Below, piece by piece: positions 2,175 through 61,677 of a DNA stretch of 64,000 nt (its first letter is position 1; each line of letters begins with the position of its first letter). The notes beneath the pieces are model-generated. The model ran no database searches, had not been told where the DNA came from, and saw only the letters and a list, made by a program, of their open reading frames with translations. The DNA is taken from positions 62,001 through 126,000 of IMG/VR virus record IMGVR_UViG_3300033977_000108; one strand, given 5' to 3'. A program made the position numbers and the translations under genes.

Positions 2175-2930
2175 ATGAGTGTCGAATTCAGCGTTTGCCC
2201 TAATAAAGAACCCAACAATAAGTCTATCTCTATCTATCTTATTATCAATAAGCTAAATCACAAAATGTATGTTGGACAAACCTACAGGAGCTTGAAAAAG
2301 CGCTGGTGGGAGCATTGTCGTGGAACTCAATGTAGGGTTCTGGGCAGAGCTATACGCAAATACAAGTCTGAGAACTTTATTATCACACCAATAGTATCCG
2401 TGTTTATGGAAAAAGAGGCCGATGCATTGGAAACGGAATACATAAGCTTTTTTGATACTATGAATCCGTCCAAAGAATACAATCTTACATCTGGAGGCGG
2501 TAGGGGAAGAATGCTATCCAATGAATCCAGAGATAAAATGTCCGAATCAAAAAAGGGCGAAGCAAATCCACATCGTAACTTGATGAATAATAGCCAAAAA
2601 TACAGAATGAACTGGAAAGAGAACATGAAAAAGGCAATACATGGACATCCACATTGGGATTGGACTGGAAAATCCCCAGCGGCAATAAGCAGATACCTGA
2701 GAGTTCATTTTGGCGAGCCTAACAAATGCGAAAACGTTCATTGTATATACCCTCGTAAGATTGGTAAAAAGGGAAAATTACTACAGAAACCTACTGGATA
2801 CAAGTGGATAAATATCACTGATAATAATCTATCAAAGACTAGAGATGCTTGGCGCATATTATGTAATAGTTGCGCTTCATTCTGGAAGTGGAATGGCTTT
2901 GGTAATAAAAGTGAGGTGTGCTTTGCCTGA
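2175..2930 (+). CDS. Free-standing GIY-YIG homing endonuclease
   Basis: SIYLIINKLNHKMYVGQT..RWWEH..E..YNLTSGG, NUMOD3-like SNESRDKMSESKKG; AT-rich relative to flanks. Confidence 0.9.
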   Translation: MSVEFSVCPNKEPNNKSISIYLIINKLNHKMYVGQTYRSLKKRWWEHCRGTQCRVLGRAIRKYKSENFIITPIVSVFMEKEADALETEYISFFDTMNPSKEYNLTSGGGRGRMLSNESRDKMSESKKGEANPHRNLMNNSQKYRMNWKENMKKAIHGHPHWDWTGKSPAAISRYLRVHFGEPNKCENVHCIYPRKIGKKGKLLQKPTGYKWINITDNNLSKTRDAWRILCNSCASFWKWNGFGNKSEVCFA

Positions 2931-9425: not shown

Positions 9426-9441
9426 GATAGGTAAGTAATTG

Positions 9442-9996
9442 ATGTCACAGAACTTATACTACCCCGAGTCGCGTCAATTCGATGTACGTGAAGAAATGGA
9501 TAATCTTCTCTTCGGCAGCCACGAGAATGCGCCTATAGGTGTGCCGGTAATTGTGCGCCGCATACAAGATAAAGTATGTGCCTGCTGGGATGGGCAGACT
9601 GGCTCACCAGACCCTAATTGTAAGTATTGTGAAGGCGAGGGCTTCCTGTGGACAGAAGACCTGGAGACCGCCTACATTGTGCGTAACTTCGGAAGCGTCC
9701 AGAATCCCAGCGCAGTCATAAGCCAAGAGAATATGGTCACCCAGGTAGGTGTGACAGAGGTTAGCCGCGCGCTGGCGTTTATGACATATAGGGCATTTCC
9801 GAATTGGGAACGCTATGTAAAGCCCGAGCATCCGAGATACGATTCCCTATATGAGTTGAAAGTAGACGAAGATGGCAATATTCAACATCCCCTAATCCGT
9901 GCTGCTAAGTGGCAGATAAGGGATGTGGCGCCGCATCGCGGTGACTATGGACGTGTGGAGTACTTCGAATGTGGTTTGCAGAAAGAAACCAAATAG
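9442..9996 (+). CDS. Putative head-closure (stopper) protein with Zn-finger
   Basis: CACW...PNCKYCEGEG motif as in neck proteins of large myoviruses; C-terminal WQIRDV..GRVEYFEC; position. Confidence 0.55.
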   Translation: MSQNLYYPESRQFDVREEMDNLLFGSHENAPIGVPVIVRRIQDKVCACWDGQTGSPDPNCKYCEGEGFLWTEDLETAYIVRNFGSVQNPSAVISQENMVTQVGVTEVSRALAFMTYRAFPNWERYVKPEHPRYDSLYELKVDEDGNIQHPLIRAAKWQIRDVAPHRGDYGRVEYFECGLQKETK

Positions 9997-10010
9997 AATC
10001 AATGAGTTAG
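9997..10010 (+). promoter_or_regulatory. IHF-consensus-like site
   Basis: AATCAATGAGTTA matches WATCAANNNNTTR; 13-mer ATCAATGAGTTAG recurs at 55723-55735. Confidence 0.4.
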
Positions 10011-10012
10011 AG

Positions 10013-10150
10013 ATGATTGTTTATTTAATACGTAATAAATTGAATGGTAAAGGATACGTAGGACAGACAATACGTTCTCTTGAACAGAGATGGCCGGAAC
10101 ACAAAGCAGCTCTTATTGCCGGCCGTTGGGCCCAAAAAGAAACAAAATAA
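10013..10150 (+). pseudogene. Truncated GIY-YIG endonuclease remnant (45 aa)
   Basis: MIVYLIRNKLNGKGYVGQTIRSLEQRWPEH aligns with the N-terminus of 2175..2930; lacks the catalytic Glu/Asn half. Confidence 0.8.
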
Positions 10151-10169
10151 AGGACTTAAGGAGATAGAA

Positions 10170-10979
10170 ATGAGACAAATCACCCTGATGATCTTTGCCG
10201 CCGTGCTCTTCACAGCGACCCTTGTGTTGGGTCAGGGCGTACCCGAAATAGAGAAAGGTTATGTAAATACCAAGCTTTATCCCGCCACTGCTTTACTTTA
10301 TTCGCAGACCGCTGAAGGTAGCATGGACATGCGCTGCACAGCTACCGCCGTAGAAGAGACTGATAGCACTTTTACTTTTGTCACCGCCAGCCATTGCGGT
10401 TGTAGTGAGGATTCTGTCAAGAACATAGTAACAGTGGAGAAGACTTTCTTCTTCATTAGCCCCGACATCCCCGGCAATAAAATCTATCTAAAAGCTACAC
10501 CAATAGGCTGTGGCTTTCGTCATCGTGGAGACGATTTCTTCTTATTGACCACTGATAAAACCATCCATTTCCCTATTATTCCGCTGGGCAAGGACCCAAA
10601 GAGGATGGATAGCATCATCAATGTTGGCGGTCCCTTGGGCCTGGGTAAGCAAATCTTCGTAGGCATGGTCACCAATCCAAGCGTAGACCGGCCTATAGTA
10701 GATGGAGACATAAACTGGACTAATGCCGTTCTTTTACAGCTATTTGGCGTGAATGGCGGGAGTTCTGGTTCTTCCGTGGTTTGTGAAGACCAGCATGCTA
10801 TTTGTTCTTTCGTCGTCGGCAGCGTGGCAGAGACCACCATGGTTGCCATGCCTGTATCACGGCTAATCAAATTCAGGGAGGATTTGGCTGCTGGAAAATA
10901 CAAATGGTATGTGGCCAATCCAGATGAGCCGGCCAAGATTGTAGTGGGTGCGGCCGCCGCCCCGCCAAAGACCGACTAA
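10170..10979 (+). CDS. Trypsin-like serine protease with signal peptide
   Basis: AGGAG RBS; MRQITLMIFAAVLFTATLVLG; CTAT..VTASHC (His), DDFFLL (Asp), GGSSGS (Ser). Confidence 0.85.
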   Translation: MRQITLMIFAAVLFTATLVLGQGVPEIEKGYVNTKLYPATALLYSQTAEGSMDMRCTATAVEETDSTFTFVTASHCGCSEDSVKNIVTVEKTFFFISPDIPGNKIYLKATPIGCGFRHRGDDFFLLTTDKTIHFPIIPLGKDPKRMDSIINVGGPLGLGKQIFVGMVTNPSVDRPIVDGDINWTNAVLLQLFGVNGGSSGSSVVCEDQHAICSFVVGSVAETTMVAMPVSRLIKFREDLAAGKYKWYVANPDEPAKIVVGAAAAPPKTD

Positions 10980-11023
10980 GAGATTGTAAGTTCATTGGAT
11001 AGCGAGGTTTCCAAGCCGCCGCG

Positions 11024-11039
11024 ACCTATACTAACCAGG
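11024..11039 (+). promoter_or_regulatory. Repeated intergenic motif ACCTATACTAACCAGG (copy 2)
   Basis: Identical to 7570-7585; directly upstream of the terminator-sheath-tube block. Confidence 0.55.
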
Positions 11040-11062
11040 AGGGAGAATAGATTGAGGTCTGT

Positions 11063-13761: not shown

Positions 13762-14475
13762 ATGTCAAACTCACCTTTGCCAACTGTTACAGGCAATCCA
13801 TCAACCGAAAGTGATATAGCTCGTAGTTACAACTCATTTTCCGGTAGCGATATACGAGCCATGATTGGCCCCTATACCTTCGCTGAAATCCAAGCTATTA
13901 GTTACAGCGTCACACGCGAGAAGGCGCCTATCTATACGATGGGTTCTCCTGATGTGCGCTCTTTCAGCCGTAACAAGCGCGGTGTGGCTGGCTCGTTGAT
14001 CTGGATCAACTTTGACCGTCATTCTCTGTTGAACTTGATCCGAGCGTCACAGGGTACTTTTGTCGCTAATGTTGACGATCTACGGCCTGAATTCAGAACG
14101 GCCCAAACCGCTTATATTCAGGATGGGTCATTGGTCTCTGCGCCAGAGGTTCGTGATACCGGCGTGCCGGCGTCTGCTTATATTGACCAGTCAACTCTTG
14201 GAGCCAACATTGCTACAACTGGTGCTTTGAGCGGATATAAAGAACTGGCAATCCCTTGGTATTCTGACCAGATTCTGCCTTTTGATGTGACTGCTTCCGG
14301 CGCGAATGAGTATGGTGCGGCTACAGGTATGAAGCTGTATGGTGTGGAAGTCTTGAATGAAGGTAGCGGCATTTCAATTGATGACCCAGTTACTGAAATG
14401 CAGGCTACTTTCGTTGCCCGCCTGGCTATGCCTTGGATGGCCATCAGGACGCCTTGGACCAATTCTGGCGCCTAA
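13762..14475 (+). CDS. Tail tube protein
   Basis: Follows the sheath, strong RBS; SFSGSDI..QAISYSVTREKAPIYTMG..RGVAGSL..LPFDVT..GISIDD..TFVAR. Confidence 0.75.
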   Translation: MSNSPLPTVTGNPSTESDIARSYNSFSGSDIRAMIGPYTFAEIQAISYSVTREKAPIYTMGSPDVRSFSRNKRGVAGSLIWINFDRHSLLNLIRASQGTFVANVDDLRPEFRTAQTAYIQDGSLVSAPEVRDTGVPASAYIDQSTLGANIATTGALSGYKELAIPWYSDQILPFDVTASGANEYGAATGMKLYGVEVLNEGSGISIDDPVTEMQATFVARLAMPWMAIRTPWTNSGA

Positions 14476-14505
14476 TCCCTGACCCGCCATAGCAAAACCT
14501 CCCTT

Positions 14506-14537
14506 GGCCGCGGCGCTTGGTCGCGGCCTTCTTTCTT
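14506..14537 (+). terminator. Intrinsic terminator after the tube gene
   Basis: GGCCGCGGC-gcttg-GTCGCGGCC followed by TTCTTTCTT. Confidence 0.7.
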
Positions 14538-15533
14538 ATGTCAATACCCAACTTTGACCCACTTAGTGCTTTGGATGGCGGCTTATCTACGCCTAACCCA
14601 CAAATACAGCAAAGCAGCACTCTGCCTGTTTCAGGCATGACAGTGCTGCCACCTGACATGACTGGGGTACCTTTGACCCAGCCTCCCAATCAGATAAGCG
14701 ACCAGCAGGCAGCCGGTATACAACAAGCCGCCAATACTTGGCCCAGCTATGCACCTTTACCGCAAATAATGGACCTGAATGGCGTTCCATTGAGTCTGAA
14801 CCCTAATCCCTCTGATGTTGGCTCGGACCTTATTATCAATCCGACAGCTATGAATACACTGGCCACCCCAGGTATTACAAATGATTACGACAACAACATT
14901 ACAAGCTATACCGGGTCAGATTTGCGGCTTATTGTGGATGTAGTAGATGCTTTTCGTCCCTGGCCGACCAGCACAAAGCTGACGAAGCAGCTCATAGAAT
15001 GCACTACTATTACCGTCTCCGTTCATAGGGAAAAGGATGCTGTACGGGCTTGTAGTTTTATCAATCCAAAAGGCTTCGCGCGTGGCAAGAGAACAATAGC
15101 TGGTACGCTTATTTTGACCCAGTTCACGGTAGATGTATTGCTTCGGTTCCTGGGCGCCACACTTTGGAATGATACCAGCAAAGACAGCGGCTATGTAAAA
15201 GTAGACCAGCTGCCGCCTATGGATTTTACTATGGTGTTTGGTAATGAACAGGGACAATGCTCCTATCGCCGCCTGCTTGGGGTTGATTTTCTCACCGATG
15301 GCACCATCTATTCAATGAATGACGCTATGACAGAACAGACCATCAGTTTTGTGGCGGCTGATTTTACGCCCCTATTGCCATTCAATCTGAAATGTTTATC
15401 CAACAACATACGGCCAAGCGCATCGGCGCAGCTGACCCCCGGCGACCTAATAAGAGCCAACACCCAGAATTCCAGCAATACGATACAGAATAACACCAAT
15501 GTGAAGCCAATAGAAAGTGTGATAGGCCAATGA
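14538..15533 (+). CDS. Tube-like paralogue 2 (tube initiator-like)
   Basis: SYTGSDL..TVSVHREKDAVR..GKRTIAGTL..DQLPPMD..SFVA aligns with the tube. Confidence 0.7.
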   Translation: MSIPNFDPLSALDGGLSTPNPQIQQSSTLPVSGMTVLPPDMTGVPLTQPPNQISDQQAAGIQQAANTWPSYAPLPQIMDLNGVPLSLNPNPSDVGSDLIINPTAMNTLATPGITNDYDNNITSYTGSDLRLIVDVVDAFRPWPTSTKLTKQLIECTTITVSVHREKDAVRACSFINPKGFARGKRTIAGTLILTQFTVDVLLRFLGATLWNDTSKDSGYVKVDQLPPMDFTMVFGNEQGQCSYRRLLGVDFLTDGTIYSMNDAMTEQTISFVAADFTPLLPFNLKCLSNNIRPSASAQLTPGDLIRANTQNSSNTIQNNTNVKPIESVIGQ

Positions 15534-52950: not shown

Positions 52951-52967
52951 CCAAGTTGTGGAGGAAA

Positions 52968-53750
52968 ATGAAGCCCGTCATATATTCCGATTTCAATTGG
53001 CAGCCAAAATTGACGGATAGGGACGTTCAAATTGCCATTATGGTGGATTATCGCCCAGAACAAGATGCTTTTTGGGAGGCGCCCATTAGAATATTCGTCC
53101 AAGCCGAACCTCCATGTGTGCGTCCTGATGTACTTGCCCGTTTATCCAAAGAACAGAGTAGATTTACAGCCATTTTAGGTTGGCATTCTTCGCTTCGTGA
53201 CTGCCCGAATGCCAGCTATTTCAATCTCTGTACTGAGACACGTCTCGGAGAGAATTATCAGCCGCTTGCCGATAAAAAGTTTGGTGCTTCTTATTTAATT
53301 AGCACCAAAGCATGGTGCCCAGGCCACATATTCAGGCAAGCTGTCTTTGATGCTGTGGGAAGCTTTGATGGGTTTGAAATTGCCAAATTAAAGAATCTGC
53401 CTTCGCAATACATAGAAAAGGCAGATTTCATCGGCCATTACCAATTTGATATCTCTATTGAAAACGAATTCATCGAGAATTGGTTTACGGATAAGATAAT
53501 TGATGCCTGGGTGGCGAAGGTTGTGCCGATCTATTGTGGGTGCCCGAATCTCGCCGATTTTGGATTTGATACGAGCGGGGTCTTATATTTTTCCAGTATT
53601 GATGATCTAAAAGGGCTTTTGCAACGGATCACTCCGAATACCTATGCTAGCATGTCGGTTGCCATAGAGACCAATTATAACCTGGCGAAGAAATGGATTG
53701 ACCCTTGGCTGCTGGATAAAGAAATAACCAGGATACTGGAGGGAAATTGA
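52968..53750 (+). CDS. GT10 (alpha-1,3-fucosyltransferase-like) glycosyltransferase
   Basis: YQFDISIEN..WFTDKIIDAW..VPIYCG motif; GGAGG RBS. Confidence 0.85.
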   Translation: MKPVIYSDFNWQPKLTDRDVQIAIMVDYRPEQDAFWEAPIRIFVQAEPPCVRPDVLARLSKEQSRFTAILGWHSSLRDCPNASYFNLCTETRLGENYQPLADKKFGASYLISTKAWCPGHIFRQAVFDAVGSFDGFEIAKLKNLPSQYIEKADFIGHYQFDISIENEFIENWFTDKIIDAWVAKVVPIYCGCPNLADFGFDTSGVLYFSSIDDLKGLLQRITPNTYASMSVAIETNYNLAKKWIDPWLLDKEITRILEGN

Positions 53751-54448
53751 ATACATCTCCAGCGAAACCGACTAGGGTGCTCATAGCGATTACCAGCTGC
53801 GACAAAGAACCTTATCTATTTAGGCAGAAGCTTCAGCAAGAGACATGGATACCTATAGCCCAGCAGGCTGGTTATGCCGTTGAGTTCTTTACTGGCAAGC
53901 GTTTAGGTGTCTCGGATGACTATTTGAAACTGCCCCTCAAATTAAGGGCTATGTGCCGTTGGGCAACAGAGCAGAATTATGATTACATGCTCAAAGTAGA
54001 CGATGATACTTATGTGAATGTCGGGGGCTTGAGAATTATAAGGGCAGATTATGCTGGAGTTCCTATACCACCAAATGATTGTGGGGATTATAAGAATTCA
54101 GCTCCGGAACTTAAACCTGGGACTACGAAATATCCCTATTGTCCTGGAGGGGCGATCTGGTTATCAGCGAGAGCGATGAGGTTTATTGCGAATGCGCTGG
54201 TTGAGACGGATTGGGCTGATGATAGATGGGCAGGACAAGTGCTGGGGAAATATAACATAATTATCTGTTCTATGGCAGATAAGATGATTCTGGGTCCTGT
54301 TAATCATGGTATGTTCAACCCAGCAACTTTGCGGCCTCTATTGAAGAAAGAGATTGTAGCTGTTATGCAAGCCGGTGCAGGTGACAGAGGCAAAGACAAT
54401 TTTGTTCTATGCCAGAAATTCTTTGCTGGTGCTTATATATTGAGATGA
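53747..54448 (+). CDS. GT31 (galactosyltransferase/Fringe-like) glycosyltransferase
   Basis: QETW..L..K..YDYMLKVDDDTYV..GGAIWLS..DD. Confidence 0.8.
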   Translation: MNTSPAKPTRVLIAITSCDKEPYLFRQKLQQETWIPIAQQAGYAVEFFTGKRLGVSDDYLKLPLKLRAMCRWATEQNYDYMLKVDDDTYVNVGGLRIIRADYAGVPIPPNDCGDYKNSAPELKPGTTKYPYCPGGAIWLSARAMRFIANALVETDWADDRWAGQVLGKYNIIICSMADKMILGPVNHGMFNPATLRPLLKKEIVAVMQAGAGDRGKDNFVLCQKFFAGAYILR

Positions 54449-54825
54449 AACAAATTCCCAAAGCTTGGCGGCGGCACAACAGAAAGAGAAAGAAATCCAG
54501 TTATGAAGTCATTGTAGAATGCTGGCTAAAGGAACTGGGTGCTCATTATAAGCGGGAAGCGGCAATCGGCCATTGCCACGCTGACTTCCTGATTTATCCC
54601 AGGACACTCGTAGAAGTCAATGGATGCTACTGGCACAAGTGCCTAAAGTGCTTTCCAAAGCCGACTAAGAAGCAGGAAGCGCAGAGAATCAGAGATTTCT
54701 ACCGCTATCAGTTCTTCCAAAAGAAAGGCTATAGAGTAGTGGTTATACGAGGGCACGAGATAGATGAAGACCCATTGGGAGTAAAAGAACACATTAAGAA
54801 ATTGTGCTCGTCTTTGGATGAGTGA
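54445..54825 (+). CDS. Vsr/DUF559-like PD-(D/E)xK endonuclease
   Basis: ADF..VEVNGCYWH.C..RD..GYRVVVI..E; ATGA-coupled. Confidence 0.8.
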   Translation: MKQIPKAWRRHNRKRKKSSYEVIVECWLKELGAHYKREAAIGHCHADFLIYPRTLVEVNGCYWHKCLKCFPKPTKKQEAQRIRDFYRYQFFQKKGYRVVVIRGHEIDEDPLGVKEHIKKLCSSLDE

Positions 54826-54827
54826 TT

Positions 54828-55730
54828 ATGGCTTTCGCATCAGGAAATGTAGGACCTAACATTGGGGGCGGATTGCTTGCCGGGCAGAACGATGCTACAG
54901 GCGGGCAGAATTCAGCCCTTTGGGGCGTCCCAATTGCCGCCGCCGCTGGTGGACTGGGTTATTGGGCGTGGAAGCGCTACCCAAGAGAAACCGCACAAAT
55001 GCCTTTATTCCCAAGAGGCGAGCTGCCGGAACGCAGTATGTTAGGCGCCATGGGAAGAGATATAGACCGGGCCTGGGCGTATGTCGGCAGTCGTATGTCC
55101 AGGACTATCGGCGACTTACGCTATAATATGGGCCGGCACCCACAGCAACTGGAACTGCCTTTTGGTGCTGCTGCGGCACGCAATGCGCGCGGTGTAGGAA
55201 GTTGGATAGGAAGAGCCAAGGCATGGGGAGGGAATCTTCGCACAGGCGCGATATGGGGCGTACCCGATATTATGAGGGGACGGCCTATTCGCGGGCTCAG
55301 CCGTGTAGGCCGAGGTATAGGGTCTGGTTGGAAGATGGGTTTTGGTTCCGGCTGGGCGGGCTGGGGATTTGGATTAGTGGCTGGCGGGGTAGGTGCTGGT
55401 TTAGCACCTCGGGGTCATAGAGTAAGCACCTTTGCCGGCGCAACAATGGGCTGGATGCTAGGAGCGCTTATAGGCGGCGCCATTGCCGGTCCTGTGGGTG
55501 CCACTGTTGGTATGTTTGTTGGAACCACGGCGTTAGAAGGTGTAATAGCCAAGCCTATACAATTCCTGCACGATTATGCTACGATGACCAGACATTTGGG
55601 CATGGGTGGTTGGTATGAGGATACCTATCCGGCTTATACTATGCGACAGCGGGCAGTAAGAGAGATGTCGGCTAGCCTACTCAATGCCCGACAATATTTG
55701 GGCCGCGAAGCTCTCCTTTTACATCAATGA
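54828..55730 (+). CDS. Gly-rich membrane protein with glycine zippers
   Basis: GATMGWMLGALIGGAIAGPVGATVG; C-terminal TMRQRA..NARQYLGREA. Confidence 0.65.
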   Translation: MAFASGNVGPNIGGGLLAGQNDATGGQNSALWGVPIAAAAGGLGYWAWKRYPRETAQMPLFPRGELPERSMLGAMGRDIDRAWAYVGSRMSRTIGDLRYNMGRHPQQLELPFGAAAARNARGVGSWIGRAKAWGGNLRTGAIWGVPDIMRGRPIRGLSRVGRGIGSGWKMGFGSGWAGWGFGLVAGGVGAGLAPRGHRVSTFAGATMGWMLGALIGGAIAGPVGATVGMFVGTTALEGVIAKPIQFLHDYATMTRHLGMGGWYEDTYPAYTMRQRAVREMSASLLNARQYLGREALLLHQ

Positions 55731-55738
55731 GTTAGCAC

Positions 55739-55768
55739 TTGACAGCTTTGCGTAGTTTATAATACACT
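55739..55768 (+). promoter_or_regulatory. Sigma70-like promoter of the HNH gene
   Basis: TTGACA (55739)-18 nt-TACACT (55763); GGGAGG RBS follows. Confidence 0.5.
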
Positions 55769-55784
55769 AACATCGGGAGGAACT

Positions 55785-56519
55785 ATGGCAAAGCTAATAA
55801 ATTTGCTTGGGCAGCGTTTTGGCAGACTTGTTGTAGTAGAGCGGATGAGACAAAATAAGAGAGATAGGCCGGCATGGCGATGCTTGTGTGATTGTGGGGT
55901 TGAAACAATCATTGAAGGCGAAAATCTTAGATATGGCCATACAAAAAGCTGCGGTTGTTTAATACCAAATTTCATAGATCTGACTGGACAACGTTTTGGT
56001 AAATTGGTTGTTTTAGAGATGGCTGATAGGAACAAATTTCATCATATTCTATGGAAATGTAAATGTGATTGTGGAATGCTAAAATCTGTTTCTACGACCG
56101 TGCTAAGGAATGGAAAAACTATCAGTTGTGGCTGCGCTCATAAAGAAGCCATGGTTGCTCTTAGTAAGCAGTATCGTGAAGCTCATGGCTGTATTAGTGA
56201 AACCTATGAATATAAGATATGGCAATCGGCAAAACATAGGGCAAAGCGTGATAATCTACCGTTTAATATCTTGCCATCCGATATCATAATCCCTAAATTA
56301 TGCCCGGTTCTCGGTATTGAGTTGAAAAGGAATGGGCGAGAAGCAAAAGGTGATAGTCCATCTATGGATAAGATAATCCCACAACGAGGCTATGTTAAAG
56401 GAAATATCAGGATTATCAGCTTTAGAGCCAATTCTATAAAGAGGGACGCTACGGCTGAAGAGCTTAGAAAAGTGGCCGACGATGCAGCAAAACAGGAAGC
56501 TATGCTATTTCATCAATAG
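55785..56519 (+). CDS. Free-standing HNH-type homing endonuclease
   Basis: Two (N/D)L.GQRFG.LVV..W.C.CDCG..SCGC repeats; CPVLG..SMDKI..GYVKGNIRIISFRAN. Confidence 0.88.
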   Translation: MAKLINLLGQRFGRLVVVERMRQNKRDRPAWRCLCDCGVETIIEGENLRYGHTKSCGCLIPNFIDLTGQRFGKLVVLEMADRNKFHHILWKCKCDCGMLKSVSTTVLRNGKTISCGCAHKEAMVALSKQYREAHGCISETYEYKIWQSAKHRAKRDNLPFNILPSDIIIPKLCPVLGIELKRNGREAKGDSPSMDKIIPQRGYVKGNIRIISFRANSIKRDATAEELRKVADDAAKQEAMLFHQ

Positions 56520-56528
56520 GGAGTATCT

Positions 56529-56774
56529 ATGGCTGATATTACATATGGAGGGCTGGATTTAACGCTTTTAGAAGGACGTGTGAATCAATTAGATGGGGCG
56601 GGCCTGCCCGCTGGACAAACATCGGACATCGCCGCCTTACAAAAGCAAATCAATGGCCTGAAGACTACAATGAATAATCTTACCCTAACCTTTGAGCAGC
56701 AATTACAGGCTCTCACCAAACAGGTAGCCAATCTAACCATCCTAGTCAATACGATAACAGGAACCAACTCCTAG
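56529..56774 (+). CDS. Small coiled-coil protein
   Basis: GGGAG RBS; heptad pattern. Confidence 0.6.
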   Translation: MADITYGGLDLTLLEGRVNQLDGAGLPAGQTSDIAALQKQINGLKTTMNNLTLTFEQQLQALTKQVANLTILVNTITGTNS

Positions 56775-56956
56775 GGAATATACCGGTCCGTGGAAACAAA
56801 TAGGTGTATCTCCCAATCGTATGACTCATGCAAATGCGTAATGACTTTAGGCGGGTGCAGCCAATAAAGCAGCATGGTGCTCCAGGCAATCTTATCCCTC
56901 CTGTAGTTCTGTCCATAATCAAATAATCTGGGCTTATTGTCCGTGTTTTTAGGCAT
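56771..56956 (-). CDS. Hypothetical 61-aa protein
   Basis: TAATG-coupled to the GT gene; converges with the + strand gene at CTAG. Confidence 0.5.
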   Translation of the reverse strand: MPKNTDNKPRLFDYGQNYRRDKIAWSTMLLYWLHPPKVITHLHESYDWEIHLFVSTDRYIP

Positions 56957-58440
56957 TATTGTCTCTTCAAGATACCATTTTCAAAGTGTCGGGAGCGTCC
57001 TGGGATTAGAGGCGCTGCCGCTGCTGACTTCTGTACCGTTCGGCGCTGAATAGGCCTCTGGATAGGCCTCTGGTGCGGCAGAATTGGCTTCCTGACGGGG
57101 TTCGGGATACTGGTTAGGGTCTGAGGTATAGGCTTTTTATAGCTTTTACTCCTGGGTTTCTGCGTTTCGGTCCTATCTGTCCTGAAATCATAGATATACA
57201 GAGGTTCTTCTATCGTATAGCCGGTCTTCAAAACGCCGTCCTTTGTCATTAGATGCCAGCGTTCGGAGTCTTCACTCATGCTTTTGGCAGGAAATCTGTA
57301 CTGGCGGGCGATTGTGGCACGCGTAGGGCATAAATGATTGGGCTCGCGGATTTGAAATACATCGCTCAAGTCTGTATCTTGTTTGTATTCAATGGCAAAG
57401 CGGGAAATCCTGGGATGCTTCAAGTCCAACATAGTAAGTTGAAGGAAGCAGATGACGTCTACATCTTTCTCTGCGGCGGCCACCAGCTTGGCTACATAGT
57501 CGGCCGTAATCTTATCATCGTCATCAATGTAGCATAGATATTTCCCTCTGGCTATGTCCATCAATTCATTGCGTTTAGTACCTACATCCTTTTCCAGATT
57601 ATCAATGTTATACAGTATTTCAACATCGTCTGGGTTGGGCAAGTCAAACACCTGGGCGTATAACCCAGCCAATAAATCCACCAATAGCTGATGCCGGCTT
57701 TCAATCGAACAGATTAGAATGCTCAAAATAGGGTCTTTGATATCGAAGTTCTTAGCCCGCCGTTTGTTAAAAAGCTCTCCATCTACACCATAATAGGTCT
57801 CATTCCTTTGCATCAGCTCATCCCATTGGGCGCCGGTGAAAATCGGATGCAAATGCTTGACCAAGCACTTCCCTGAAGCCCTGCTCCATTCGGGTACCTC
57901 GGTGAATTTATGCAGCATTTTATGTACTTCACCATTCTCTGTGTCGCCGTATAAAGAAACATAGGCAGGAGAAAAGAAGTAGTTGAAACGACGATACAGA
58001 TTATAGCCGATAATGCAAAGGGTCGGCATGCTATCCGGCCGGAAGCCATCCCAATAGTATAAACTACCATCCAGCCCTGGATAATACTTATCCATGTCTG
58101 TCGCTATGATGTCGTCATAATCTTTTACCTGCGGCCACATATCGTCGGCGGCTACGATGGCAATGTCAAACCTGCGGCCGTGCATCCCTATATTGCAGGC
58201 CTCATGCTTGCAGCGGGCATGGACTATCATAAACTCTACATTGGCGCCATTGCTGGTGTATTTATGGCTGGTGCCCGCGCTAAAAAGATCCAAAGCGGTC
58301 TGTAAGGTTGGGTCATCATCATCAAGATTGACAAGGAAGTTCACATTATGCTTGCCAGAGAGCAGGGAAATCCAAGTGTCCAAACATTCCTTGAATTGTG
58401 TCGGGCGGGAGCGGGTTGGGAATTTGATTAGTATTTCCAT
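56956..58440 (-). CDS. Tandem GT2-like glycosyltransferase with basic tail
   Basis: ILIKFPTRSRP..AADDM; ILSILICS..KRNEL..GKYLCYIDDDD..SED. Confidence 0.85.
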   Translation of the reverse strand: MEILIKFPTRSRPTQFKECLDTWISLLSGKHNVNFLVNLDDDDPTLQTALDLFSAGTSHKYTSNGANVEFMIVHARCKHEACNIGMHGRRFDIAIVAADDMWPQVKDYDDIIATDMDKYYPGLDGSLYYWDGFRPDSMPTLCIIGYNLYRRFNYFFSPAYVSLYGDTENGEVHKMLHKFTEVPEWSRASGKCLVKHLHPIFTGAQWDELMQRNETYYGVDGELFNKRRAKNFDIKDPILSILICSIESRHQLLVDLLAGLYAQVFDLPNPDDVEILYNIDNLEKDVGTKRNELMDIARGKYLCYIDDDDKITADYVAKLVAAAEKDVDVICFLQLTMLDLKHPRISRFAIEYKQDTDLSDVFQIREPNHLCPTRATIARQYRFPAKSMSEDSERWHLMTKDGVLKTGYTIEEPLYIYDFRTDRTETQKPRSKSYKKPIPQTLTSIPNPVRKPILPHQRPIQRPIQRRTVQKSAAAAPLIPGRSRHFENGILKRQ

Positions 58441-59840
58441 CAGATTGATGTATAGAACTCGTGCATCTTCTCGGGCGTCACATAATGCGTGCTGATGATG
58501 TCATTATCCTTCGTGGGGTAGGCATCAGAAATAGAAGACTGATAGCGCGTATCCCAGTGTAAGAAAATCTTGTGCTGTGCCAATAGGCGGCTGACTGCTG
58601 TGTCTTCTGGTTGCAGACCGCCTTCAAAGATTGTAAACTCTTCCAAGGAATGGGATAGAATGGCTTTCATTGCTGCCCGGCTTAGCCAATAACCAGCGCC
58701 GCCGGAAGCAAATGGCACATCGCCGGACCTGTGCTCCGCATTTAGTTCCCGCCCTACATAGTCATAACAAACATAATCCGAATACAAAAGCCTATCGGGC
58801 ACTGCATAGGTGTCGGTGTCGCATTTGAAAAGATAGGTATAGCCTTGTTTATAGGCCCAATCAATCAGAGCATAAACCTTGTGGCATAGATGGTCATAAT
58901 CGCCAGGCACATCCAGGTATACTTCATTCGGCTTTGTTGTTGGCTGGTCGCCGGCCCCAAAGAAGAAGCGTACATCTACATTGGGAAGATTGCCTAACCA
59001 GGTTTCCTGTTGGGCCTTCTGAGATTCCCTGTTCTTATCACAGGCTGGGACAGCGACTAATATCTTTTCATCAGGCACTGCCAGTTTATACCAGCGGTCG
59101 GGTATAATGTCTTTGGCGTCGATGTCTTTGATTGCAAACCATTTATCTGGGGCTATGCGCAACCCAGTGTATTGGGATAGCCACGAGCCCCACCAAGAAT
59201 AGCTACTATTTGTGATAATCGCATGGCGGCATAAAGTCATCAATCGCAGATGCACGTATTTATCCCCGGGGACTACTACCCCGTCAAACTGGGACAATCC
59301 ATTCCAACCTGGTTCATCGGTGAAGATGTAGAACTTGGGATTCTGCACTTTCTGCTGAATCAGACTACACGCCGCGCGATACCAAGACAAAGGCATCAAT
59401 CCATGGATTTTCATCACATCGCTTCGTAGATAATCACCCCGGCGGATAGATACAGCTACGGATTCGCTATTGCTTATCTCTTTGGCCAGGTCAGGTGGCC
59501 TTATCTGATAACGAAAAGCAAGGTGCCGCCTGATAACGGGTTCTATCGCCGCAAAATACTTCTCGGATTGCCAATAACCATCAAAGCAATTATTGTCCCC
59601 TGCTTCAAGAAATGAGGGATTGAATGTAAAAGCATCCTCTGTTTTCGTGATGGGGATAGCATGGCTTATAGTGGAAGCCTTGATCATGAAATGCTGGAGA
59701 TCGTATGTTCTGCCAGAACTATCAGGATAGGTAGAAGTATCTAATAGCAAAGATGTTTTATACCGCTGGGCAAGAGCGGTGCCAAAGGCGTACTGGAACA
59801 TCTGATTCCCGAGACCACCTCTGAGTTTTATAGTAATCAT
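58440..59840 (-). CDS. GT11 (alpha-1,2-fucosyltransferase-like) fused to a GT31-like domain
   Basis: GGLGNQMFQYA, GYWQSEKYF, IRRGDY, NSSYSWW; then FKCDTDTY..SGGAGYWLS..ED. Confidence 0.9.
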   Translation of the reverse strand: MITIKLRGGLGNQMFQYAFGTALAQRYKTSLLLDTSTYPDSSGRTYDLQHFMIKASTISHAIPITKTEDAFTFNPSFLEAGDNNCFDGYWQSEKYFAAIEPVIRRHLAFRYQIRPPDLAKEISNSESVAVSIRRGDYLRSDVMKIHGLMPLSWYRAACSLIQQKVQNPKFYIFTDEPGWNGLSQFDGVVVPGDKYVHLRLMTLCRHAIITNSSYSWWGSWLSQYTGLRIAPDKWFAIKDIDAKDIIPDRWYKLAVPDEKILVAVPACDKNRESQKAQQETWLGNLPNVDVRFFFGAGDQPTTKPNEVYLDVPGDYDHLCHKVYALIDWAYKQGYTYLFKCDTDTYAVPDRLLYSDYVCYDYVGRELNAEHRSGDVPFASGGAGYWLSRAAMKAILSHSLEEFTIFEGGLQPEDTAVSRLLAQHKIFLHWDTRYQSSISDAYPTKDNDIISTHYVTPEKMHEFYTSI

Positions 59841-60571
59841 GTCCTTTTTAGCACGCCATTCTCAAAATGCCTGGAGCCGTGAGAAGTGGGGACTATGTTC
59901 TTTGGCGTGGGCGTTGGCTTACGAATAACCTGGCGTCTAGGCAGGATTGGTTTTGTGGCGGGGGCTGTGATTGGGTTCTTGGCATGAGTTTCCGTACCCT
60001 TGAAGCGGAAATCATAAAGGTAGATGGGCACAGGAATGGTAGTGCAGGTTCTTATGTGCTGGAATACTTCCATAGCCCATGCGCTATCTTCCCCATAGGA
60101 AATCTCTGGGAACTTGTGGGCTTTGGCGTGGGCGGCTAAAATAGGACAGACATGGTAGGGAGGTTTATTATACACACCTTCAATGGTAGGGCTCTCCTTG
60201 CCATAATCCATTGAATGCCTAAACATCTTAGGGTTTCTTAAGTCCCAAGTAATAATGCCGGTAATGCCTACAGCGTCAGGGGATGTTTTTACGGCGTCCA
60301 GGATGCGGGCTACATAATCGCCGGCAACTCGGTCATCGTCATCAACAAAGACCACATACTTGCCGCGGGCCATCTCAAGGAGTTTATTGCGCTTGGCGCC
60401 TACGGTAATCTCTTTATTATCAACCAGATAGATGATTTCTACTGATTCAGGATTGGGCAGGTATTTAATCTGGGCGTATAAGGATGCAAGCAATCCCTGG
60501 AGCAATTCTTTCCTGGCTTCCAGCGAACAAATGAGAATACTTAAAATAAGAGATTGTTCGGTCTCCGGCAT
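59837..60571 (-). CDS. GT2 glycosyltransferase with basic tail
   Basis: ILSILICS..GAKRN..GKYVVFVDDDD..GED; paralogue of the C-domain of 56956..58440. Confidence 0.85.
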   Translation of the reverse strand: MPETEQSLILSILICSLEARKELLQGLLASLYAQIKYLPNPESVEIIYLVDNKEITVGAKRNKLLEMARGKYVVFVDDDDRVAGDYVARILDAVKTSPDAVGITGIITWDLRNPKMFRHSMDYGKESPTIEGVYNKPPYHVCPILAAHAKAHKFPEISYGEDSAWAMEVFQHIRTCTTIPVPIYLYDFRFKGTETHAKNPITAPATKPILPRRQVIRKPTPTPKNIVPTSHGSRHFENGVLKRT

Positions 60572-61677
60572 TAAGTTGCATCCTCATCGCGGGCCCTCAT
60601 GATAGCTCGTATTCCATCTCTCAATTCAATGGTGCGTTGGTCTGTGGCGCCAATCAGTTGCCATAATCCCTGATGGTCGCGTTTCAAATCGTGGGCCGGG
60701 TCAAAGCGAATTCTGTCAAGGAAAGACCAGCGAGTAGCATAGCCTCTCTTGTTCTTTGATCCGTGATAGAAGTGGAACACATGGCCGGGCATAAAGCCTA
60801 CATTCTTCTTTATGTGGTCGGCGCATAGCTTGGCCCAATTTCGCACCATGCTATTATAGATAGTCAGGTGGTCTGTATGCTCGGCTATTGAGGATTCAAC
60901 ATGGCCTATAAGAGCCGTAGCCATATGCCAATCGGCAGATCCCATTATAGCCCAGTCAATCAGCATACCAACTTTGGCTAAGGAACTCCTACGCCAAGCC
61001 CAAGCCAACCCAGGCTGCCCCCAGAAGCCTTTTGCATAACCACCAGGGCCATAGGCAGCCTTGAATGGGATGGGGTCATGCCCGCCAGGCCTATGAGGCT
61101 CATTCTGCTTTGCAAACCATTCGGCTATAAAGCCTGGAAACATCAGCGTATCACGCGCGAACAGGTTCTTATCCCTTTGTCTCACGCCCATGGGCTCATA
61201 GTTGGCATTCAAGTCTTGTACTGTGCTGAACATCTGTATGACATCATAATGTTGCAGCAGATGTAGTGTTTCTTGTGCCCAGTCCTGGCGCGCGAACATA
61301 GCGTCGGCGTCAATAAAGGCTATGTATTGAGCCTCCGCCGGCAATCGCTGAACCATTAGATTCTGGGCGTTTTCTTTATACCAGAGCTCATCATGGGAGC
61401 GCAGCTGCAAATGGTGCGGATTGTCAGGCTGCGTTACTTCAAACTGGCGGCCACCAAAAGCTACCTCGGCGGTATATAAAACGGCACCGCCTGCCTCGAT
61501 TTGGCGTTCAAAATTATGATAGTTCTGATAACGAGAACGCCAACGGAGAGGATTGCTCACCATGGTGACAACATAAAGTTTGTCTGGGAAAGGGTGTATA
61601 CCGGGTTTGGCATGTGCAGGATGCTCAATATATGCCCCGGAACCCTCTGGAAAGTGTTTCAGGGGATGGGCATTCAT
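60571..61677 (-). CDS. GT-A-fold glycosyltransferase-like protein
   Basis: WYKENAQN..IAFIDAD..G.AWA..GSAD..HFYHG. Confidence 0.6.
   Translation of the reverse strand: MNAHPLKHFPEGSGAYIEHPAHAKPGIHPFPDKLYVVTMVSNPLRWRSRYQNYHNFERQIEAGGAVLYTAEVAFGGRQFEVTQPDNPHHLQLRSHDELWYKENAQNLMVQRLPAEAQYIAFIDADAMFARQDWAQETLHLLQHYDVIQMFSTVQDLNANYEPMGVRQRDKNLFARDTLMFPGFIAEWFAKQNEPHRPGGHDPIPFKAAYGPGGYAKGFWGQPGLAWAWRRSSLAKVGMLIDWAIMGSADWHMATALIGHVESSIAEHTDHLTIYNSMVRNWAKLCADHIKKNVGFMPGHVFHFYHGSKNKRGYATRWSFLDRIRFDPAHDLKRDHQGLWQLIGATDQRTIELRDGIRAIMRARDEDAT

What the first reader, a model, noticed from the sequence alone, without database searches (positions are those of the whole stretch)
55707..56519. HNH endonuclease also ends with a copy of its upstream gene's terminus
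Seen: the upstream gene ends GAA GCT CTC CTT TTA CAT CAA TGA (EALLLHQ*) and the HNH ends GAA GCT ATG CTA TTT CAT CAA TAG (EAMLFHQ*), 18/24 nt. The element has its own promoter and RBS. This second case, from a different nuclease family, suggests that 3'-end replacement is a recurrent invasion strategy rather than chance.
Basis: partly seen in the sequence, partly recalled or inferred. Interest (0 to 1): 0.68.

Follow-up and report, generated by a model that had tools for sequence, protein, structure and literature searches.

The report
Phage nuclease gene carrying spare gene-end
A selfish nuclease gene has inserted into the last codons of a conserved jumbo-phage gene and brought a substitute gene end with it, leaving the original end fused to the nuclease; this trick is known from fungal mitochondria and is shown here to recur in phages.

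Summary
Gene A (54822-55730) ends EALLLHQ-stop. The nuclease ORF directly downstream (55785-56519) ends EAMLFHQ-stop, 18 of 24 bases identical. Chance is excluded: every relative of gene A ends in this signature, the nuclease family's homology stops just before the 7-residue tail, and only 4 of 34,453 gene-end pairs in this genome match as well.

Most relatives have gene A followed within 10-76 bases by gene B, with no nuclease. Three other lineages carry a related nuclease at the same A|B site, each with a second A-type end after it.

Close filled/empty pairs settle which copy is native. At the A|B site (L204 vs L008) and at a primase-helicase gene in T7-like phages (L107 vs L108), the empty allele carries the downstream-type end (29/30 bases). 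The end now attached to the host gene is divergent (18/30) although the rest of the gene is about 97% identical.

So a 789-base cassette (spare end, spacer, nuclease ORF) sits inside gene A and displaces the native end. This matches the mobile endonuclease ORFs with C-terminal duplication of fungal mitochondria (Allomyces atp6, Glomus). I found no description of it in phages.

The window's other case, a truncated GIY-YIG ORF at 10013-10150, fits the same pattern. Cleavage, target site and self-immunity are untested, and the promoter claim is weak.

The parts
54822..55730 (+). Gene A: 302-aa glycine-rich phage protein of unknown function, the invaded host gene. The conserved C-terminal domain is about residues 235-302.
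   Evidence: ORF. No Pfam, PHROG or NCBIfam hit. Homologues P0001-P0006 and an in-genome paralogue share the C-terminal domain and end signature. The atlas gives only viral hypothetical proteins and glycine-zipper-like structure.
55707..55730 (+). Copy 1: the 7 codons plus stop (EALLLHQ) now terminating gene A. Inferred to be the substitute end brought in with the cassette.
   Evidence: Sequence. The inference comes from filled/empty allele pairs elsewhere.
55731..55784 (+). 54-base spacer with a promoter-like TTGACA (55739-55744) and a Shine-Dalgarno GGGAGG (55775-55780).
   Evidence: the promoter match is 10/12 and not significant over shuffles. A similar TTGAC directly after the substitute end occurs in L107, L112, L122 and L123. 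It is absent in L024 and L204.
55785..56147 (+). Nuclease ORF, N-terminal half: two Cys-rich repeats (residues 1-60 and 61-121), presumed DNA-binding zinc fingers.
   Evidence: Internal repeat and invariant Cys/Gly columns in alignment A2. phrog_374 matches this part. There are 3,029 database relatives.
56148..56495 (+). Nuclease ORF, C-terminal beta-beta-alpha-metal (HNH / Endo VII-like) domain, residues 122-237.
   Evidence: phrog_3322 at 4e-31 and phrog_1035 'endonuclease VII' at 2e-18, both ending at residue 237. AlphaFold model has pLDDT 91.8. Best structural match is PacI: Foldseek prob 1.0, TM 0.53; VIA Z 6.8 over 97 residues, with other HNH nucleases below it.
56496..56519 (+). Copy 2: 7 codons plus stop (EAMLFHQ), read in frame as the nuclease's last residues. 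Inferred to be the displaced native end of gene A.
   Evidence: It fits the gene-A family signature. It is contiguous with a native-looking ribosome site and gene B, as in empty alleles L005 and L008.
56520..56528 (+). 9-base spacer with GGAG, the native A-to-B junction.
   Evidence: Empty alleles have 10-38 bases with a GGAG-type site here.
56529..56774 (+). Gene B: 81-aa coiled-coil-like protein, the conserved downstream neighbour of gene A.
   Evidence: 75% identical to the gene directly after A in empty allele L004. B-like genes lie 15-76 bases after A in 35 metagenomic loci.

Best explanation
A free-standing homing-endonuclease-type cassette of 789 bases (55707-56495) is inserted inside gene A, between codons 295 and 296. 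The cassette carries, in order: a substitute copy of gene A's last 7 codons and stop, a short spacer with a ribosome site (perhaps a promoter), and a nuclease ORF with no stop of its own. The substitute end keeps gene A complete. The original end is pushed downstream. There it supplies the nuclease's last 7 codons and stop, and it keeps the native ribosome site for gene B.

Inferred mechanism: in mixed infections the nuclease cuts or nicks nuclease-free alleles in or near the conserved 3' end of gene A, and break repair copies the cassette in. The differently coded substitute end would protect the carrier genome from its own nuclease. It would also lower the repeat homology that could delete the cassette.

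Shown: the architecture, its recurrence, its patchy distribution, and (in close allele pairs elsewhere) that the downstream copy is the native one and the upstream copy is foreign. Inferred: nuclease activity, the cut site, self-immunity, and the direction of the event in the window itself.
For: - Tail signature and statistics.
- Nuclease homology ends at residue 237, and family members usually end there.
- Empty alleles are the rule. L004-L016 have A directly followed by B. In 78 metagenomic loci, 35 show B within 76 bases of A's stop and 9 have the nuclease.
- The same site is filled in three other lineages, each with a second A-type end after the nuclease: L024/L202, L209 and the L204 group.
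- L204 vs L008: the remnant equals the empty allele's end, and the downstream flank is 94-100% identical.
- L107 vs L108: copy 2 matches the native end at 29/30 bases and copy 1 at 18/30. The helicase gene is otherwise 96-99% identical, falling to 88-91% in the 200 bases next to the site, as expected for co-conversion.
- Tails co-vary with the resident gene in three helicase lineages that are only about 25% identical to each other.
- Relatives of the nuclease behave as mobile genes; for example, P0071 splits a UvrD helicase gene.
- No intron RNA was found.
Against: - No close empty allele exists for the window's own lineage, so the polarity (which copy is native) is by analogy.
- The nuclease family lacks the canonical catalytic His (Asp-Lys/Arg instead of Asp-His) and the zinc Cys pairs. 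It has no Pfam HNH hit, so activity is unproven.
- The window's nuclease is not resolved into the A|B-site clade in the tree.
- The promoter is not significant and not conserved.
- Most helicase-site cases were found by searching for in-frame tails, so the high share of in-frame fusions is biased by ascertainment.
Confidence: 0.78

Rival explanations
1. In-situ duplication: the cassette inserted with a local duplication of the target's last 24 bases (for example by staggered cuts or repair slippage), and the two copies then diverged. No foreign end was imported.
For: In the window the two copies differ at only 6 of 24 bases, and no close empty allele fixes the polarity.
Against: In L107 the upstream copy differs from the native end at 12 of 30 bases, many of them synonymous. 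The rest of the gene is about 97% identical to empty L108 and the downstream copy is 29/30, so there was too little time for divergence in place. In all lineages both copies remain valid family-type ends with the stop in register. That is unexpected for a drifting relic.
Confidence: 0.1
2. Old, now immobile relic: the insertion happened as described, but the nuclease is catalytically dead or domesticated and no longer homes.
For: The active site is non-canonical, with Asp-Lys/Arg in place of Asp-His and the zinc ligands lost. L209 carries an in-frame stop in its nuclease. The window's GIY-YIG case is a 45-aa stump.
Against: The ORF is intact, with nine invariant and ten near-invariant columns across 63 members. 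Presence/absence occurs between genomes with 94-97% identical flanking proteins. PacI, the best structural match, is an active nuclease; that it too has an atypical active site is from memory, not tested here.
Confidence: 0.15
3. Functional mimicry: the nuclease needs the borrowed C-terminal peptide, for example as the same docking motif its target protein uses, so the tail is kept by selection on the nuclease.
For: The tail is in frame in the window, L024, L209, L047, L048, L071 and L112. Its residues stay within the family consensus. That the helicase tails end in an aromatic residue like the T7 gp4 tail that binds the polymerase is from memory, not tested.
Against: In the L204 lineage the remnant is out of frame and the nuclease stops at a TAA formed at the junction. 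L111, L123 and L122 nucleases at the helicase site have no tail. In-frame cases were partly found by a search that requires them.
Confidence: 0.05
4. Chance resemblance, or a group I intron or intein with exon 2 equal to copy 2.
For: The match is only 8 codons long.
Against: The statistics and family signature argue against chance. There is no Rfam match at E up to 1 in 54300-57000. Gene A is full length with its own stop. The nuclease has its own start and ribosome site, and in L024 and L204 only 10 and 2 bases separate A's stop from the nuclease start, leaving no room for a ribozyme.
Confidence: 0.01

Closest known systems
Mobile endonuclease ORFs (mORFs) with C-terminal duplication in fungal mitochondria: Allomyces macrogynus atp6; Glomus atp6, atp9, cox2, nad3; Rhizopus atp9; Mortierella cox2 (PMC3630166 and the work it cites)
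   Same: An endonuclease ORF sits inside the 3' part of a host gene. A foreign C-terminal coding piece, in phase with the host gene, precedes the ORF. The native C-terminal piece is retained downstream. The native piece is closer to relatives than the inserted one. [quoted passage not shown]
   Different: Here the host is a tailed phage rather than a mitochondrion. The nuclease is HNH / Endo VII-like, or GIY-YIG in the window's other case, not mainly LAGLIDADG. The duplicated piece is very short (3-19 codons against tens of codons). The nuclease has its own start and ribosome site rather than being fused to the host gene.
Free-standing homing endonuclease genes of T4-like phages (seg and mob genes; intronless homing) (PMC2988022)
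   Same: Small nuclease genes between conserved genes, patchy among relatives, spread by break repair with co-conversion of flanks, sometimes promoter-less cassettes.
   Different: The T4 genes sit between genes or overlap the upstream ORF by 11-24 bases. That review reports no duplication of the target's end. Immunity there rests on sequence differences near the site, not on a carried spare end.
HEG islands with fragments of essential genes in ICP1 and other phages (PMC10055350)
   Same: Nuclease genes mark boundaries of genetic exchange. Small fragments with homology to adjacent essential genes lie next to them. L204 vs L008 shows such a boundary about 100 bases inside gene A.
   Different: That work notes fragments as possible recombination substrates. 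As far as I read it, it does not describe a substitute end that completes the invaded gene with the native end fused to the nuclease ORF.
Genes-in-pieces created by a homing endonuclease (Aeromonas phage Aeh1 nrdA/mobE; cited in PMC2988022)
   Same: A homing nuclease inserts inside a coding sequence without an intron or intein. A relative of the window's nuclease does this to a UvrD helicase gene (L021).
   Different: There the host gene is split into two working polypeptides. Here it stays whole because the cassette supplies the missing end.

Membership tests
Free-standing homing endonuclease gene | Encodes a nuclease domain plus a DNA-binding module | tested here: met
   PHROG 374, 3322 and 1035. 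Two Cys-rich repeats. Modelled beta-beta-alpha-metal fold nearest PacI.
Free-standing homing endonuclease gene | Present or absent at the same site among related genomes | tested here: met
   A|B site: nuclease in 9 of 78 metagenomic loci and none of 16 viral or ENA loci. Helicase site: L107 filled against L108-L110 empty at 94-97% protein identity.
Free-standing homing endonuclease gene | Cuts the empty allele site-specifically and is copied in by repair | not testable with these tools
   No biochemistry was possible.
Free-standing homing endonuclease gene | Co-conversion or mosaic boundary in the flanks | tested here: inconclusive
   Seen in analogues: identity gradient in L107/L108, and a sharp boundary about 100 bases upstream in L204/L008. 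It cannot be tested for the window because no close relative exists.
HNH (beta-beta-alpha-metal) nuclease superfamily | Beta-beta-alpha-metal fold | tested here: met
   Model pLDDT 91.8 with strand-strand-helix at domain residues 71-96. PacI Z 6.8 over 97 residues. EcoKMcrA, Gme HNH, IscB/Cas9 HNH and Hpy99I follow at Z 3-4. The scores are modest.
HNH (beta-beta-alpha-metal) nuclease superfamily | Catalytic His at the end of strand 1 (the first H of HNH) and Cys zinc ligands | tested here: not met
   The family motif is S-P-S-x-D-[KR]-I ... G-Y-V-K-G-N ... I-S-x-R-A-N-x-x-K. In the window that is Asp195-Lys196, with a single invariant Cys (alignment A5).
HNH (beta-beta-alpha-metal) nuclease superfamily | Match to curated Pfam HNH models | tested here: not met
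   No Pfam family at E up to 0.01. PF13392 and PF01844 scans of the genome do not hit this ORF.
Mitochondrial-type mORF with C-terminal replacement | Inserted C-terminal piece in phase with the host gene, endonuclease ORF, and native C-terminal piece retained downstream | tested here: met
   Copy 1, ORF and copy 2 lie in that order. Gene A is full length by alignment.
Mitochondrial-type mORF with C-terminal replacement | Native piece closer to ORF-less relatives than the inserted piece | tested here: inconclusive
   Met in L107/L108 (29/30 against 18/30) and in L204/L008. Undecidable in the window, where the closest relative L004 is too distant.
Group I intron or intein | Ribozyme core or Hint domain; host gene complete only after splicing | tested here: not met
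   No Rfam match. Gene A is complete with its own stop. The nuclease has its own start.

The most novel reading that the evidence does not exclude
The borrowed end is not just a relic. By ending in the same C-terminal peptide as its target protein, the nuclease is taken to the same partner: for the helicase cases the replisome, for gene A an unknown virion or membrane partner. A selfish gene would thus copy its victim's docking tag.
Probability: 0.06. Interest if true: 0.8.

Novelty: new variant of a known kind. Interest (0 to 1): 0.56.

Why it matters
Homing nucleases favour the most conserved stretches of essential genes, but inserting there normally destroys the gene unless an intron or intein removes the insert. 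Carrying a spare gene end is a third solution. It was known from fungal mitochondria. The data here show it recurring in tailed phages, at unrelated genes and with at least three nuclease types.

Practical consequences:
- The displaced end marks the nuclease's likely target and the exact insertion point, so specificity becomes directly testable.
- The last codons of phage genes next to nuclease genes may be foreign, which matters for phylogeny and recombination mapping.
- Odd C-terminal extensions on annotated phage nucleases can be read as footprints of invasion.

Tried and rejected
- Close relatives of gene A in viral contigs (single-protein scan): none. No DNA match in the phage collection.
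- PDB sequence searches with the protein and with a 63-member profile gave nothing meaningful.
- The closest full-length nuclease homologues (P0044, P0071, P0117) show no end duplication, so the feature is not universal in the family.
- A gapped local-alignment scan of tails was too noisy because of tandem nuclease genes. The ungapped end-anchored score was used instead.
- Two other high-scoring gene-end pairs in the genome are ordinary tandem paralogues.
- The intact GIY-YIG ORF at 2175-2930 has no duplicated end.
- The ORFs after the tail sheath gene (13762-15533) were checked as a possible split gene, but they are two paralogues, not a nuclease insertion.
- The tree could not place the window's nuclease.
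- Literature searches found the mitochondrial precedent but no phage description. That library is incomplete, so this is not proof of absence.

Full report
**Setting.** The window is bases 62001-126000 of a complete 204,633-base virus record with terminal repeats, a jumbo phage known only from a metagenome. The finding lies after the tail-fibre-like genes, in a region rich in glycosyltransferase genes.

**The observation.**
- Gene A (54822-55730, 302 aa) ends EALLLHQ-stop at 55707-55730.
- After a 54-base spacer comes a 244-aa ORF (55785-56519), which ends EAMLFHQ-stop at 56496-56519.
- Nine bases later gene B starts (56529).
- The two 24-base ends share 18 bases, and the similarity does not extend beyond them.

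**What the downstream ORF is.**
- It matches PHROG families annotated as HNH endonuclease, endonuclease and endonuclease VII. The matches to its C-terminal domain all stop at residue 237, just before the tail.
- It has two Cys-rich repeats followed by a nuclease domain.
- A model of that domain built from 63 relatives is confident (pLDDT 91.8).
- The model is closest to the HNH restriction enzyme PacI, with other HNH nucleases below it.
- It is not a textbook HNH. Pfam finds nothing. The family motif has Asp-Lys/Arg where Asp-His is expected, and the zinc cysteines are lost.
- I therefore call it an HNH / Endo VII-like nuclease whose activity is unproven.

**Chance is excluded.**
- In this genome only 4 of 34,453 pairs of gene ends match at 18 of 24 or better. 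Apart from this pair, they are tandem paralogues or a palindromic overlap.
- The end of gene A is a family signature. All six database homologues end LG-x-E-[AG]-x-x-x-HQ, and an in-genome paralogue has a variant. The pattern holds with variation in 13 viral and 78 metagenomic loci.
- Among the 120 listed relatives of the nuclease, only one other ends in HQ, namely P0116. It turned out to sit at the same site.

**Empty and filled sites at the A|B junction.**
- In the closest relative (L004; protein A 54% identical), gene A is followed after 38 bases by a gene 75% identical to gene B, with no nuclease.
- The same holds in L005-L016.
- In 35 metagenomic loci a B-like gene starts 15-76 bases after A.
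- Nine metagenomic loci, forming three lineages, have a related nuclease between A and B:

| Lineage | End of gene A | Spacer | Nuclease and what follows it |
|---|---|---|---|
| L024/L202 | EASFLHQ-stop | 10 bases | 184 aa, 53% identical to the window's; ends EGAFMHQ-stop, then 9 bases and gene B |
| L209 | EGAFLHQ-stop | 11 bases | Carries an internal stop; ends EGAFMHQ-stop |
| L204 group (seven contigs) | EALLFHT-stop | 2 bases | Stops at a TAA formed from the native Gly-Lys codons; the remnant of KEAALMHQ-stop follows out of frame |

- The nucleases of these three lineages form a supported clade. The window's nuclease is nearest to them by identity (58%) but is unresolved in the tree.

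**Which copy is native.** Two natural pairs answer this.
- L204 against the empty L008:
  - The 1.5 kb downstream of the site is 94-100% identical.
  - L008's gene A ends with the very sequence that survives as the remnant after L204's nuclease.
  - L204's gene A is 94% identical for only about 100 bases upstream of the site and about 60% further up, a recombination boundary.
- The helicase site, found by surveying 80 viral loci with the same nuclease domain:
  - L047, L048 and L071 have the nuclease just after a T7 gp4-like primase-helicase gene.
  - Each nuclease ends with a copy of its own neighbour's end, although the three helicases are only about 25% identical to each other.
  - L048 has many close relatives.
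  - Filled L107/L116 have the helicase ending ESTLLRETF-stop and the nuclease ending ETTILREGF-stop.
  - Empty L108-L110 (94-97% identical helicases) end ETTILREGF-stop, followed by the same next gene.
  - At base level the nuclease's tail matches the empty allele's end at 29 of 30. The filled helicase's own end matches at 18 of 30, with many synonymous differences.
  - The rest of the gene is 96-99% identical, falling to 88-91% in the last 200 bases.
- The downstream copy is therefore the native end, and the upstream copy came in from elsewhere.

**Other nucleases at the helicase site.**
- L112 has the same substitute end and TTGAC spacer as L107, but a canonical HNH that runs into the last three native codons.
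- L111 and L123 have a same-family nuclease with no duplication.
- L122 has a canonical Endo VII-motif ORF.
- This junction is a hotspot. The spare-end design is one of several solutions used there.

**The window's other case.**
- A 185-aa virion protein (9439-9996) ends QKETK-stop.
- Sixteen bases later a 45-aa GIY-YIG stump (10013-10150) also ends QKETK-stop (16 of 24 bases).
- The protein's family ends in this type of motif.
- The closest relative, L272, lacks the roughly 1.07-kb insert that holds the stump and a trypsin-like gene.

**Explanation.**
- A 789-base cassette (55707-56495) lies inside gene A. It consists of a spare end, a spacer and a nuclease ORF with no stop of its own.
- The native end now finishes the nuclease ORF and keeps gene B's ribosome site.
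- There is no intron RNA, and gene A is complete.
- Spread by cleavage of empty alleles and repair is inferred from three things: the patchy distribution, the flank patterns, and the behaviour of relatives, one of which splits a UvrD gene.
- It is also inferred, not shown, that the recoded spare end gives self-immunity and stabilises the insert.
- The promoter is doubtful.

**Comparison with what is known.**
- The same design is documented for mobile endonuclease ORFs in fungal mitochondria, first in Allomyces atp6 and then in Glomus, Rhizopus and Mortierella. That includes the finding that the native piece resembles relatives and the inserted piece does not (PMC3630166).
- A review of T4 mobile elements reports overlaps but no such duplication.
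- A study of phage nuclease islands notes gene fragments beside nucleases.
- I found no phage description of the spare-end design in the library searched.

**Limits.**
- The polarity in the window rests on analogy.
- There is no biochemistry.
- The share of in-frame fusions is inflated by how the helicase cases were found.

Noticed in passing
A 185-aa virion protein ends QKETK-stop, and a 45-aa truncated GIY-YIG ORF (10013-10150) 16 bases downstream also ends QKETK-stop (16/24 bases). The closest relative, L272, lacks the roughly 1.07-kb insert (9997-11062) that also holds a trypsin-like gene.
   Followed up: partly
window 2175-2930: Intact 251-aa GIY-YIG endonuclease ORF (PF01541, 38.8 bits) just after the 692-aa ORF 25-2103. 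It has no duplicated end.
   Followed up: partly
window 54409-54825: A Vsr/DUF559-like nuclease-fold gene overlaps the start of gene A. A homologue sits in the same overlapping position in L004, L005/L006, L024 and the P0005 contig. It looks like a conserved partner of gene A rather than a recent mobile insert.
   Followed up: partly
own genome G000:C1:41851-42417 (L003:1141-1707): A 188-aa paralogue shares only gene A's C-terminal domain (39% identical) and ends EALYLNR-stop. It follows another glycine-rich 261-aa ORF.
   Followed up: no
L107-L123 (T7-like viral contigs): The primase-helicase / DNA polymerase junction is a hotspot holding at least four different nuclease ORFs in close relatives. 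L107 and L112 share the same substitute helicase end and TTGAC spacer but carry different nucleases.
   Followed up: partly
L021:1183-3736: A 249-aa relative of the window's nuclease lies between two ORFs carrying the N- and C-terminal halves of a UvrD-type helicase, with 4-base overlaps at both ends. This is a genes-in-pieces arrangement.
   Followed up: no
L209:1957-2510: The A|B-site nuclease of this contig has an in-frame stop inside its first zinc-finger repeat, as expected for a decaying homing gene (or a sequencing error).
   Followed up: no
L204:2060-2794 vs L008: Gene A of L204 is about 60% identical to L008 over most of its length. It is 94% identical in the last 100 bases, and the next 1.5 kb is 94-100% identical: a sharp exchange boundary beside the nuclease. 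L204 comes from a 452-kb contig.
   Followed up: partly
window 13762-15533: Two adjacent paralogous ORFs after the tail sheath gene both match the first third of a PHROG labelled 'major head protein'. By position they are more likely tail-tube-type proteins, so the label looks unreliable.
   Followed up: no
window 52956-54448 and 56956-61677: The A/B module is flanked on both sides by several glycosyltransferase-like genes (GT10-like, galactosyltransferase-like and GT2-like), unusual company for virion genes.
   Followed up: no
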